From Auanema rhodensis (taxonomy: Eukaryota > Animalia > Nematoda): a DNA stretch of 64,000 nt. Location of the stretch: positions 16,058,001-16,122,000 of the forward strand of contig OZ059894.1 in the NCBI GenBank assembly GCA_964057225.1, given 5' to 3'. A program made the translations under genes and the position numbers. Shown in pieces: positions 49,232-53,780 of the stretch. The first letter of the stretch is position 1, and every line of letters starts with the position of its first letter. The notes beneath the pieces were generated by a model. That model saw only the letters and a program-made list of their open reading frames with translations, was not told the DNA's origin and did not search any database.

Positions 49232-52200
49232 ATGCCCTCTGGAACATTTTCTGATATAAAAAATTTACATGTGAAAGGGCATATCTCTATAGCTCGTGAC
49301 AAAAACCAGTTGAGAAAAGAGGTAAATATTGTCCTATTTATTATAGTTGAAGAATTTATTGAAGTTTTTAACATGTGGAACTGATGGGACCATATATTTA
49401 TGGAATGAGAAATGTTTTAACGCAAATGAAACTCCTGAAGTTGTAAATATTGGAGAATCTACTAACAGTTGTATAGTATGGAAGGTAATTTTAAATGCAC
49501 TGCTGCATTATAATACGTACTATTTAGGGAGAAAACGTTTATCTAGGATGTACTACGACTGATTTCCTTCTTGGAAATGAGAAAAAAATTATAGGAAAAG
49601 CCTCAATTAACGATTTAGGGAGCGTCAGTTGTGTAAGCACATACATCAATTTGTTTTCTTAACTATTTAATGTTAAGGCTTTGAACTTTGGTTTAGAGCC
49701 AACAGCAGTCGATGTGGGGGAAAAGTTTTTAGTTGCTGGATCTAGGTACCAGTTTTTATTTCACTGGTTTTTTCCACTACTTTACTTTAGTGACTTTACG
49801 GTGAAAATTGCCAAAATTGGAAAAGAAGAAACGTACGAAAGATTATCTTTAGAAGGTGAAATCCTATCTATAGCAATTTCTCCTGATGAAAAGGTTTGTT
49901 CACTTATCGCTCAATAACGTATTTTACTATTTTAAGTATTGTGCATTCTCGGTTACTAATGGTTCTGTTTCTATTTATGATTTGACTGAAGACGTGCCTA
50001 AGAATGTATTTTCGGAAAAGATGTTTCCTGGCATATCTCTTATAGAGTTTGTTTCTTGTACGTGAAAAAAAGAGTTTATTAACTTTTTTCAGCATAGAAA
50101 ATCCTCGTACTATTCTTGCTTGGTCTAGTTCAGGTCATGAGCTGTATGTCCCTTCTACTGGTGTTATCAAAATAGTCGATCCAATATCCTGGACAGTAAG
50201 CAACAAAATGTTCAGAGGAAAAGGCGTAGAAGTTGTGAGTTTTATTTTATAAAGTTGATCTCTATGTTTAACACGTAGGACGTTTTTTCTACTCTATGTA
50301 TTTCACCCTGCGGTAGCTATTTGGCATCATCAACTATTACAAATCATTGCTTTATTTGGAGAACTTCTGATAGGTATTATAAGCAAACTTCGTTTTGAAT
50401 GTCCTTTGATGTTTCAGAGAGATAGTTTCGCAAAACCATTATAAGAGGATCTCCCAAGGAAAAAATATTATTACATCTCTAGCATTCAGTCCAACTGAAG
50501 GACGTTCTCTGATTGTTGCTGACGCTAATGTAAATTGTTTTTTTTAATAGAAAATCATAATTCAATTCAGGAAGGGCTGAGTCTATGGAAAAATGCACTT
50601 CCTGCAGGTCTTGGAGAAATACCAACTGTAGCACCAGGACCAGTTAATGATGCTAGTATGGTAAGATCATTTTAGTCGTAAAATCTTGTGAGGCAATTTG
50701 ATTTCAGGATGACGATGACGATGATGAAGAAGATGCTCCTATCAAAAGACGCAATAAACTAATTCTCGATGAAGCTGATGATGACATGGATGCTGGACAG
50801 GACGATGAGGATACAAGACGTATTCGAACAGTCCTTGGTTCTTTCACATTTCAAATTTTTAGTCTCAAACGATATTGGAGCAATCAAAAAGAAATATGGA
50901 TTCACTGAAGAAACCACTGGTAGATTGGAGGATTTTGGCTTTGGACCAATAAGTCCTGGGCATCAGTCTAGGGAGGGAACCAATGAAATGTTTGTATTTT
51001 TTATTTTATTGATTTATTTTGATCTATTTAAAGGAAATCGTATGAGCCAACTACAATTACTAAAATTGTTGAATACGAACCTGCCGTTATTCCAACTCAA
51101 TTCGTCTCGGGTAGTACTCCATCTCACCATGTCCGACGCTACCTGGTATTTCTAAGGTTATTCGTTTTCAAAATAAATCTTATTCTTAGAAGTGGAACAG
51201 ATATGGCGTAGTACGATCTTTCACCGAAGAGGAGAATAACAGTTTAGAGGTGAATATATGTTTTATTGCTGATGCTTACTTGATATTTTTAGATTGAGTT
51301 TCACGATGCTAGTGTTCATTCGGAAATTATCATTGATAATTCTGCTTCGAATTATTGTTTGGCCGATCTTTGCGATAAAGCTATCGTATTAGCTAGTTCA
51401 CCTGATGAGAAAAATGGACAAAGGTTTTTTTTTACTAATGGTTGTTATAAAAATTTGGTATTCAAGTGAGATTCTTGTGATTCATATCTCCTCCTGGGAC
51501 CCGGAATCTCGGCGATGGAACACGAAGTTGCCTGTTCGTGATATTGCTGTTGATGTTTTGGTATAATTCATACCGTTTTCTATTCATCTACTAAAAATTA
51601 TAGGCTTCCTCAGAAATTATTTGTGTTGTTACTTCTCAACGCAATATTAGAGTTTTTACTCTTGGTGGAACCCAACGACATGTAATATGTCATCCAGGTA
51701 CATAAAGCATTTTGTCTCTGTTATGGTTTCTTTGTTTAGCTCCAATTCTGACCTGTGCTCTATTTGGAAATAAATTATCAGTTGCTTCTGTTAATGGCGG
51801 CGAATTTTATGAAGAATATCATGGATCTCGAAAAAGCAAAGCTCATTATCAAGTATGTCAGGTCTAAATGAGTCTTATCTTTAAATTCGTTCTTGTCATA
51901 GTATTCTGTGAGCTCTTATAATATGAGTGTTCGGGGCTGGTCAGGATTAGAAAATTCAGTAAATACGCAGAATCTTCCTGTTTGTCCGGGAAAAAGACCT
52001 TTATGGCTTGCGTACAGTAGTACTGGGCAACTAATAACAATGGATAATGATTGTATGTTTATTGAAGAAACAAATCTTCAACCGTTTCTCAAACAGATAT
52101 TGTTCGATTGAAGTCTCCAGCTGGTTTCTGGGTTCCAATCTTTGATGGTGCGAAAGAAATTCAAGATAAGTCTGACGGTATTTGGCCTATTGCTGTAGTT

Positions 52201-53450
52201 GAAGGAAATACTAGACAATTTCGGTGAGCAAAAATTTCTAATAAGATTTTTATTGAATACGTTTAGATATTTATATTGTAAAGGAACTAGACATCCTTCA
52301 TTAACAACCAAGCAAGTTCCTTTAATATCTGAATGGCACCTTCCATATTGCCAACCTGAAAGTGAGAAGTCCAAGTTGGAAGAAACCTTGTTCCTTAATG
52401 AATTACAGCAGAATGTAGCTAATGATATTGGTACAAGCTTATCGGTATGGTTAAAAATCATACCTTTCTGATGTGTTTTGTTCAGGAGCTGAACTCCAGT
52501 TATCTTCAAAACTTGGTCAAGTTGTTCGCACTTGCTTGCAAGTCAGAAAGGGAGACAAGAGCCTCAGAGTTGGCTTCATTTGTATCGTCATCCAAGGGAA
52601 TTCAAGTGATGTGTAATTATGCTTCTACTCTGAAGAAAAGTGCTTTAGCCGAAAAAGTAAATAAGTTCAAATCAATTTTAAATATTTCTTGTTGATAATT
52701 TGAAGGTGGCTGCAATTGGAAGGGAAAATTTAACTGACAGCCAGCCAATGGAAAGGAAAGCCCCAATTACTATAGCTCCCCGAAGAGTTTCTATGAAGAG
52801 GAGAACGATTGAGCCAGCTCCTTCCAGAATATCTGAAGTTATTGTTCGTTATAACGTTATTACCAGTGCTAACCTCGTATCTTGCAGAGTCAGGCTGAGT
52901 CAGTAGATGTTTTTGAAGAGCGAGATGAAGAGCCTAACGAAAATGCTTCTCAAATGAATGAGAGTCTCTTCTCTGAAAGTATTCCAATTCCTCTCACGCC
53001 TTTCAATAGAAATCCATTCAAGGTGAGCTAATGAACATTTATGGATAAAATTTGAATTGAACAATTTTGCTTTTAGCGTGCTGCTGATTCTGCATTAGAT
53101 ACTTCAACTCAATCTGTGTTTGAACAACTTGAATCATCTTTTGATAACACTAAGAAAAGATCTCGGGAAGAAGCGGTGAGTTGTAAATTTTATAAGTTGA
53201 GCACAGCCATATTTGTAGTGCATATATGATTATATGCGACTGTTAATGGCTGTGCAAAATCATCGCGAAGCGATAATTAAAAAGCAGTCGAACTTTACTT
53301 TCCTTCCGTAGATTTTGTATCTCGGGGGGTCTTAGCAGTTCGAACATTAAACACCCACACACCATTTTTTAATTAATTTTTTTTAAGACTCAATCATCTC
53401 CATTCCCATCCAATAAGAGACAAAAAAAATTATCTGATTGGAAAGTATAA
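49232..53450 (+). CDS. ctf-4: Ctf4/AND-1/WDHD1 replisome hub (WD40 + SepB domains)
   Basis: WD40 exons (LTCGTDGTIYLW, LAWSSSG, ISPCGSYLAS), FVSGSTP...RRYL.WNRYGVV, IEFHDASVH, RVFTLGGTQ, IWPIAV, YLYCKG..HP, KLFALACKSERETRA. Ends KRQKKLSDWKV*. Confidence 0.92.
53199..53349 (+). ncRNA. Intronic H/ACA RNA (ctf-4 last intron); predicted U2 snRNA pseudouridylation guide
   Basis: Hairpin 1 stem GCACAGCCAU/AUGGCUGUGC, H box AAAUCA (53257-53262), then a small hinge hairpin. Hairpin 2 stem UCGAACU/AGUUCGA with pocket UUACUUU/UCUUAGC, 14 nt before ACA-UUA. Confidence 0.85.
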
Positions 53451-53780
53451 CTGAAAATGTATGATATATGTAGCAATATTTTCTGTCTTTTATAATTGTA
53501 TTTACTTTAATTTGAAAAATACTAACATTAAAATTTTTGTGAATAAATTATCGTTAAAATTATGTTGGTTGCCTTATTATTCAAGTAAGATTTTCTTAAA
53601 GAAAAATATTTTGGAAATCATAACAAATAACAGTTAATCACAAACAGTTCTAGAAATATGCAATACCCAATTCTAAATGGTCCAACCTATTCTTACTGTT
53701 TATGCCTTTTTTTTACGCCATTTCGTATAACTATACTTCTCAGCTTAATTTAAAAGTGGGTAGATGGTATTTAAGTAATA

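What the first reader, a model, noticed from the sequence alone, without database searches (positions are those of the whole stretch)
53199..53349. H/ACA RNA in a ctf-4 intron predicted to pseudouridylate U2 snRNA in U2/U6 helix I (human U27 equivalent)
Seen: canonical hairpin-H-hairpin-ACA architecture. The 3' pocket strands UCUUAGC and UUACUUU give 13 bp with GCUAAGA-[U]C-AAAGUG at the canonical 14-nt distance from ACA. Established (recalled): GCUAAGAUCAAAGUGUAGUA is the nematode U2 5' region just upstream of the branch-point recognition sequence, and this U lies in U2/U6 helix Ia next to the catalytic core. U27 is not among the human U2 pseudouridines I know of. The UUU in the guide fits the three-A nematode variant. 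The 5' pocket (AUUUGU/GUUAAUG) may address U2 stem-loop IIa, which is weaker. Inference: a lineage-specific spliceosomal modification guide (scaRNA-like; no perfect UGAG CAB box, loop 1 reads UGAU).
Basis: partly seen in the sequence, partly recalled or inferred. Interest (0 to 1): 0.75.

Follow-up and report, generated by a model that had tools for sequence, protein, structure and literature searches.

The report
Intronic guide RNA for U2 pseudouridine
A 151-base structured RNA in the last intron of a nematode ctf-4 gene is a conserved H/ACA guide RNA whose pocket fits exactly the one uridine of U2 spliceosomal RNA (U28, in the U2/U6 helix next to the catalytic centre) that was found pseudouridylated only in worms, so it is probably the missing guide for that modification.

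Summary
Window 53199-53349 (+) folds into hairpin, H box (AAAUCA), hairpin, ACA, with the ACA 3 nt from the proposed end (z = -6.45). It lies in a 212-nt intron whose splicing mRNA contigs confirm. The 3' pocket (UUACUUU / UCUUAGC, 14 nt from ACA) pairs 7+6 bp around U28 of nematode U2 snRNA.

They found it in no other U2 mapped by then, and it lies in U2/U6 helix I.

Orthologues sit in ctf-4 introns of Auanema sp. JU1783 and Caenorhabditis bovis. Twelve of 14 pocket bases are invariant, while six stem pairs carry compensatory changes.

No Rfam family matches. I found no paper that assigns a guide to this site, though three key C. elegans papers were not available.

Still open: expression of the small RNA, the species' own U2 and rRNA sequences, and the C. 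elegans copy, which is not in the ctf-4 loci of Elegans-group species.

The scan noted another U2 guide (aimed at U41) elsewhere in this genome, but not this one.

Verdict: a new member of a known kind, with a useful target assignment.

The parts
53176..53387 (+). Last intron of the ctf-4 homologue (GT..AG, 212 nt), which hosts the RNA
   Evidence: mRNA contigs of four runs skip exactly this stretch. An upstream exon hits Pfam Ctf4_C.
53199..53349 (+). Candidate box H/ACA guide RNA (about 151 nt; ends not mapped)
   Evidence: Fold z = -6.45. Orthologues found in Auanema and C. bovis.
53201..53255 (+). 5' hairpin. Its internal loop (5' pocket) is not conserved between species.
53257..53262 (+). 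H box AAAUCA (ANANNA), one nt after the 5' stem. It reads AUAUUA at the same offset in Auanema and C. bovis.
53263..53273 (+). Hinge mini-hairpin UCGC-GAA-GCGA. It is conserved in sequence; in C. bovis it is kept through U.G pairs.
53267..53274 (+). GAAGCGAU in the hinge, the reverse complement of U2 snRNA nt 1-8. This is a lead only.
   Evidence: U2For primer in PMC1276797; 8 nt in the window and Auanema, 7 nt in C. bovis; 4% of shuffled hinges do as well.
53288..53294 (+). 3' hairpin lower stem, 5' strand (UCGAACU)
   Evidence: Three of its 7 pairs carry changes on both sides across species.
53295..53301 (+). 3' pocket, 5' strand UUACUUU. It pairs with U2 A30-G35.
   Evidence: Identical in Auanema; GUACUUU in C. 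bovis.
53302..53329 (+). 3' hairpin upper stem and terminal loop (no UGAG CAB box)
53330..53336 (+). 3' pocket, 3' strand UCUUAGC. It pairs with U2 G21-A27.
   Evidence: Identical in Auanema; UCUUAGA in C. bovis.
53337..53343 (+). 3' hairpin lower stem, 3' strand (AGUUCGA)
53344..53346 (+). ACA box, 14 nt below the pocket top and 3 nt before the proposed 3' end
   Evidence: ACA sits at the same position in both orthologues.

Best explanation
The element is a box H/ACA guide RNA processed from the last intron of the ctf-4 pre-mRNA. After splicing, the hairpin-H-hairpin-ACA core would assemble with the dyskerin (CBF-5) complex and be trimmed to about 150 nt.

Its 3' pocket binds U2 snRNA. The strand UCUUAGC pairs with U2 G21-A27, and the strand UACUUU pairs with A30-G35. 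[quoted passage not shown]

U28 lies in the stretch of U2 that forms helix Ia with U6. The modification would stabilise an A-Psi pair next to the catalytic centre.

The 5' hairpin is needed for the two-hairpin particle but seems to carry no conserved guide.

Shown: the fold, the motifs, the complementarity, host-intron splicing, conservation with covariation, and Psi28 in C. elegans (published).

Inferred: expression, RNP assembly, that this RNA makes the modification, and that this species' U2 has the same sequence and the same Psi.
For: - Structure and boxes.
- Host intron spliced.
- Auanema orthologue in the orthologous last intron, with identical pocket strands and covarying stems.
- C. 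bovis orthologue found by covariance model: 58 bits, E = 4e-11, pocket GUACUUU / UCUUAGA, still 13 bp with U2.
- Across the three species, 18 pairs are 100% paired and 6 carry changes on both sides. Sliding the partner columns by 1 to 3 columns either way drops pairing to 25-43%.
- Psi at U2 position 28 in C. elegans, reported in no other U2 mapped by 2005, in U2/U6 helix I: PMC1276797.
- U2 nt 1-22 come from that paper's primer. Every reported Psi position is a U in the sequence I used.
- The chance of a random pocket fitting U28 this well is about 8e-6.
Against: - There is no direct evidence that the small RNA accumulates. The only runs found are mRNA contigs, which lack the intron.
- The species' own U2 and rRNAs could not be read, so neither the target sequence nor a better rRNA target could be checked.
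- Psi28 was mapped in C. elegans. No copy of the guide was found in the ctf-4 loci of C. briggsae (including +/-10 kb), C. remanei, C. sp. 36 or C. angaria. C. elegans itself could not be searched, so guide and modification have not been seen in the same species.
- U2 nt 23-36 rest on the conserved metazoan sequence plus the paper's numbering, not on a printed sequence.
- The long hinge (31 nt between the H box and the 3' hairpin) with an extra hairpin is unusual for H/ACA RNAs.
Confidence: 0.8

Rival explanations
1. It is a genuine H/ACA snoRNA, but its real substrate is an rRNA uridine. On this reading the U2 match is coincidental or secondary.
For: Most H/ACA RNAs guide rRNA. The rRNAs of this species could not be examined with the tools at hand. 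Roughly 1e-5 per site, over about two thousand uridines (my rough figure for the rRNAs and snRNAs together, not counted), gives a percent-level chance of some match somewhere.
Against: The match is to the one U2 uridine already known to be an orphan, worm-specific pseudouridine. The chance of that for a random pocket is about 8e-6. The two pocket positions that differ in C. bovis keep 13 bp with U2: one pair is lost at G21 and a G.U pair is gained at U36.
Confidence: 0.07
2. It is a genuine H/ACA RNA that can pair with U2, but a stand-alone pseudouridine synthase makes Psi28. The RNA would then be an orphan, or would act as a chaperone.
For: Some U2 pseudouridines are made by Pus1 or Pus7 in yeast and mouse (PMC5473140). 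Good complementarity does not guarantee activity (PMC5733568). No guide copy was found in the Elegans-group ctf-4 loci.
Against: C. elegans Pus1 does not act on U2. Twelve of 14 pocket bases stay invariant while the stems drift, which argues for selection on the guide function. Geometry is canonical: 14 nt to ACA and a strong upper stem.
Confidence: 0.09
3. It is not an RNA gene at all. It is a structured intron element, such as a splicing regulator or hairpins of some other kind.
For: No expression data exist for the small RNA. The reverse strand folds equally well.
Against: The H and ACA boxes sit at the canonical offsets only on the host strand. They are conserved in three species, and in C. 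bovis the element sits in a different intron of the gene. That fits a mobile RNA gene, not an intron-specific regulator.
Confidence: 0.03

Closest known systems
C. elegans snoRNA C50C3.14 (orthologue of vertebrate SCARNA15/ACA45), the guide for U2 Psi39/41/43
   Same: A nematode box H/ACA RNA that guides pseudouridylation of U2 snRNA. Its activity was shown in a yeast assay (PMC5733568).
   Different: It targets the branch-point recognition region, which is modified in most eukaryotes. The present RNA targets U28 in helix I, a site reported only in worms. There is no sequence or Rfam relationship between the two.
Vertebrate and Drosophila H/ACA scaRNAs (for example SCARNA8/pugU2-34/44 and SCARNA4)
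   Same: Two-hairpin H/ACA guides for spliceosomal snRNA, often intron-encoded.
   Different: Those carry CAB boxes (UGAG) in their terminal loops and reside in Cajal bodies. No CAB box is present or conserved here (loops read UGAU and UUUGU). None of them is known to target the U27-equivalent uridine.
Yeast snR81
   Same: An H/ACA RNA that modifies U2 snRNA.
   Different: A different site (Psi42), a dual rRNA/snRNA guide, and independently transcribed.
ceN81 (RF01658), the H/ACA snoRNA of the neighbouring eef-1G gene
   Same: An intronic nematode H/ACA snoRNA in the same conserved gene pair. It is present three times in this window and in C. briggsae eef-1G.
   Different: An unrelated sequence and pocket. 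It has an Rfam family, whereas the present RNA has none.

Membership tests
Eukaryotic box H/ACA guide RNA | Hairpin-hinge-hairpin-tail architecture | tested here: met
   MFE folds of the window, Auanema and C. bovis copies all give this architecture.
Eukaryotic box H/ACA guide RNA | H box ANANNA in the hinge next to the 5' hairpin | tested here: met
   AAAUCA at 53257-53262. AUAUUA sits at the same offset in both orthologues.
Eukaryotic box H/ACA guide RNA | ACA three nucleotides from the mature 3' end | tested here: inconclusive
   ACA directly follows the 3' hairpin in all three species, but the mature 3' end was not mapped.
Eukaryotic box H/ACA guide RNA | Pseudouridylation pocket with its top 14-16 nt from the box, closed by a stable upper stem | tested here: met
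   7-nt pocket strand plus 7-bp lower stem = 14 nt. The G+C-rich upper stem is kept through compensatory changes.
Eukaryotic box H/ACA guide RNA | Bipartite complementarity flanking a uridine that is actually pseudouridylated | tested here: met
   7+6 bp around U2 U28. Psi28 was mapped in C. elegans (PMC1276797). Not tested in this species.
Eukaryotic box H/ACA guide RNA | Stable expression and association with dyskerin/CBF-5, NHP2, NOP10 and GAR1 | not testable with these tools
   Only poly(A) mRNA contigs were found.
scaRNA (Cajal-body-specific H/ACA RNA) | CAB box (UGAG) in the terminal loops | tested here: not met
   The window's terminal loops read UGAU and UUUGU. The orthologues' terminal loops differ in sequence, and I saw no motif common to them.
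scaRNA (Cajal-body-specific H/ACA RNA) | Cajal-body localisation through WDR79/TCAB1 | not testable with these tools
   No localisation data.
Any Rfam 15 family | Score at or above the family's gathering threshold | tested here: not met
   No gathering-level hit at this place. The best sub-threshold hits are ceN80 at 18 bits (threshold 80), SNORA49 at 14 and SNORA19 at 15, on the three copies.

The most novel reading that the evidence does not exclude
The unusually long, sequence-conserved hinge may be a third recognition element. Its GAAGCGAU (53267-53274) is the exact reverse complement of U2 nt 1-8. It is kept in Auanema, and 7 nt of it are kept in C. bovis.

In the free RNA it is masked in a mini-hairpin whose other strand (AUCGC) mimics the U2 5' end. 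The guide would then clamp U2 on both sides of stem-loop I: nt 1-8 by the hinge, and nt 21-35 by the pocket. That would be accessory base-pairing of a kind described for box C/D guides but, as far as I know, not for H/ACA guides.

Alternatively, the hinge could stand in for the missing CAB box as a worm-specific targeting signal.
Probability: 0.12. Interest if true: 0.8.

Novelty: new member of a known kind. Interest (0 to 1): 0.6.

Why it matters
Psi28 of nematode U2 sits in helix Ia of the U2/U6 duplex, next to the catalytic centre of the spliceosome. It has been an orphan modification since it was mapped in 2005. Its authors asked explicitly for the guide so that worm genetics could be used on it.

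A specific, conserved, intron-encoded guide makes that test direct. One can delete the element or mutate its pocket and ask two questions: whether Psi28 disappears, and whether cis- or trans-splicing suffers.

The finding also illustrates how guide genes move. The RNA stays in the same host gene (ctf-4) in distant rhabditids but in different introns, and it has left the gene where ctf-4 lost its introns.

Tried and rejected
- **Rfam.** I ran Rfam at gathering threshold on the whole window, and at E <= 10 on the three copies. There is no family for this RNA.
- **Expression.** These confirm splicing but hold no intron sequence.
- **Orthologues by host gene.** I searched with single exons only and did not join exons.
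  - Found in Auanema sp. JU1783 and C. bovis.
  - No copy, with the model's filters off, in the ctf-4 loci of Nippostrongylus brasiliensis or two further strongylid assemblies (L003, L004; species guessed from accession numbers, not verified).
  - No copy either in C. briggsae (also +/-10 kb), C. remanei, C. angaria, C. sp. 36 or Pristionchus mayeri.
- **Metagenome pattern scans.** The strict pattern gave 0 hits. The looser pattern gave 40 hits, none of which passes the covariance model, about what chance predicts.
- **Species' own U2.** There is none in the window. The findings index by sequence was blank, which means nothing.
- **Literature.** Zemann 2006, Deng 2006 and Thomas 1990 are not held. 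Text searches for a guide assigned to U2 position 28 found only the mapping paper.
- **5' pocket.** It gives no conserved or two-sided match to U2 nt 1-52.
- **Rejected: ceN80 as orthologue.** Only a weak generic match to hairpin 1, with a different pocket.

Full report
**What is there**

As a single strand it folds at -54.6 kcal/mol, against -31.9 +/- 3.5 for dinucleotide shuffles (z = -6.45). The fold has these parts:
- a long 5' hairpin (53201-53255);
- an ANANNA box, AAAUCA (53257-53262), one nucleotide after that stem;
- a mini-hairpin in the hinge (53263-53273) and an A-rich linker;
- a 3' hairpin with a 7-bp lower stem;
- a symmetric 7+7-nt internal loop (UUACUUU 53295-53301 and UCUUAGC 53330-53336);
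- a G+C-rich upper stem;
- ACA (53344-53346), followed by UUA.

[quoted passage not shown] The reverse strand folds equally well, as hairpins do, but only the + strand has the boxes at the right places.

**Host**

The element lies on the coding strand of a ctf-4/WDHD1 homologue. An exon at 52447-52695 matches Pfam Ctf4_C at E = 1e-13.

Contigs of four RNA-type runs of the same organism (0 differences) skip 53176-53387 with GT..AG ends and stop near 53527-53539. The element therefore occupies 151 of the 212 nt of the last intron of an expressed gene. Those contigs are spliced mRNA and say nothing about whether the small RNA accumulates.

The element is single-copy in the window.

**Target**

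The 3' strand of the pocket pairs with GCUAAGA. The 5' strand pairs with AAAGUG (5 Watson-Crick pairs and 1 G.U). UC is left unpaired between them, in the canonical H/ACA arrangement.

Patton and Padgett (BMC Mol Biol 2005, PMC1276797) mapped nine pseudouridines in C. elegans U2. [quoted passage not shown]

Their cloning primer prints U2 nt 1-22, AUCGCUUCUUCGGCUUAUUAGC. With the conserved continuation UAAGAUCAAAGUGUAGUA, every reported position (10, 16, 28, 36, 39, 41, 43, 45, 46, 48) is a U. The stated equivalences also hold (U36 = vertebrate U34; 43 = vertebrate 41). U28 is therefore the U of GCUAAGA-U-CAAAGUG, exactly the uridine the pocket presents.

Nucleotides 23-36 are inferred in this way, not read from a printed sequence. 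Their other primers matched my recollection of the rest of the molecule.

In a simulation, a random pocket of the same composition reached at least 6+6 bp at U28 in 16 of 2,000,000 trials. It did so at any of 13 uridines of the region in 384 trials.

**Conservation**

I searched with single ctf-4 exons and with database proteins and did not join exons. This recovered ctf-4 loci of eleven nematodes.

*Auanema sp. JU1783.* The orthologous last intron (after ...KKR.REE) holds a 150-nt element (L002:5991-6140) with the same architecture. Compared with the window copy:
- both pocket strands are identical;
- ACA is at the same distance;
- the H box is AUAUUA at the same offset;
- the hinge mini-hairpin and linker are nearly identical;
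- the lower and upper stems differ by compensatory changes.

*Caenorhabditis bovis.* A covariance model of the 3' domain found one further copy, L005:4373-4464, at 58 bits and E = 4e-11. Its pocket reads GUACUUU / UCUUAGA. It loses the pair with G21 and gains a G.U pair with U36, so 13 bp with U2 remain.

*All three species.* All 18 modelled pairs are paired in every sequence, and 6 pairs carry changes on both sides. Sliding the partner columns by 1 to 3 columns either way drops pairing to 25-43%. Twelve of the 14 pocket positions are invariant. This pattern is the signature of a guide under selection for its target.

**Where it is not**

With filters off, the model finds nothing in the ctf-4 loci of:
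- Nippostrongylus brasiliensis;
- two further strongylid assemblies (L003, L004; species not verified);
- C. angaria, C. sp. 36 and C. remanei;
- C. briggsae, including 10 kb on each side;
- Pristionchus mayeri.

In the Elegans-group species ctf-4 has almost no introns: about 3.6 kb for about 1100 codons. A guide for Psi28 in C. elegans, if RNA-guided, must therefore sit elsewhere. I could not search that genome. This is the main gap: the modification is documented in C. elegans, the guide in its relatives.

**The 5' hairpin**

Its internal loop differs in all three species and gives no two-sided match to U2 nt 1-52. I read the 5' hairpin as structural.

**The hinge**

The stretch between the H box and the 3' hairpin is 31 nt, with an extra hairpin, which is unusual. 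It is the best-conserved part outside the pocket.

Its GAAGCGAU is the reverse complement of U2 nt 1-8. The match is 8 nt in the window and Auanema, and 7 nt in C. bovis. In C. bovis both changes in the mini-hairpin fall on the other strand and keep U.G pairs.

Four percent of shuffled hinges do as well against U2 nt 1-52. This is a lead, not a finding.

**Comparison with what is known**

No Rfam 15 family reaches threshold, or even comes near it, on any of the three copies.

The published worm U2 guide, C50C3.14 (the SCARNA15 orthologue), serves Psi39/41/43. C. elegans Pus1 does not act on U2. Text searches found no paper assigning a guide to position 28.

Prior description of a C. elegans orthologue therefore cannot be excluded.

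'Unique' is the 2005 authors' word. Later mapping in Trypanosoma brucei found 27-34 pseudouridines in U2. I did not check whether the equivalent site is among them.

There is no CAB box, so I do not file the RNA as a scaRNA. It works like one in that its substrate is an snRNA.

**Verdict**

This is a new member of a known kind, a box H/ACA snRNA guide.

Confidence by claim:
- about 0.9 that it is a real H/ACA RNA;
- about 0.8 that it directs U2 Psi28.

The scan has noted another U2 guide in this genome (for U41, in a kindlin intron) but not this one.

Noticed in passing
L005:4373-4464 compared with window 51250-51294 and 53176-53387: In C. bovis the guide sits in a different ctf-4 intron, between ...GIE and IEFH in the Mcl1_mid region. 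The equivalent intron in the window is a bare 45 nt. C. bovis has no intron at the position of the window's last intron. So the host gene is the same but the intron differs: either the guide moved within the gene, or one of two old copies was lost in each lineage.
   Followed up: partly
window 53267-53274 (hinge): The conserved GAAGCGAU is the reverse complement of U2 snRNA nt 1-8. In the free RNA it is paired with AUCGC, which mimics the U2 5' end. Four percent of shuffled hinges match as well.
   Followed up: partly
window 44340-44467, 44881-45008, 46876-47003 (- strand): Three copies of the H/ACA snoRNA ceN81 score just above Rfam threshold (52 bits). The single C. briggsae copy, in eef-1G, scores 144 bits. 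The window's species is therefore well outside the Elegans group.
   Followed up: partly
window 45571-46249 compared with 50427-51105: A 680-nt piece of ctf-4 is duplicated in inverted orientation at 95% identity, among the ceN81 copies. This is the scrambled eef-1G/ctf-4 duplication that another note of the scan describes.
   Followed up: no
window 53388-53450; L002 and L005 gene models: The window's CTF-4, and the Auanema protein by its Pfam list, end shortly after the Ctf4_C region. They lack the C-terminal HMG_WDHD1 domain listed for the C. bovis, C. angaria and Pristionchus proteins.
   Followed up: no
all ctf-4 loci except C. angaria L008 and the ones cut short (L001, L002, L005-L007, L009, L050, L051): The divergent eef-1G / ctf-4 gene pair is conserved from Pristionchus through strongylids, Auanema and Caenorhabditis.
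   Followed up: no
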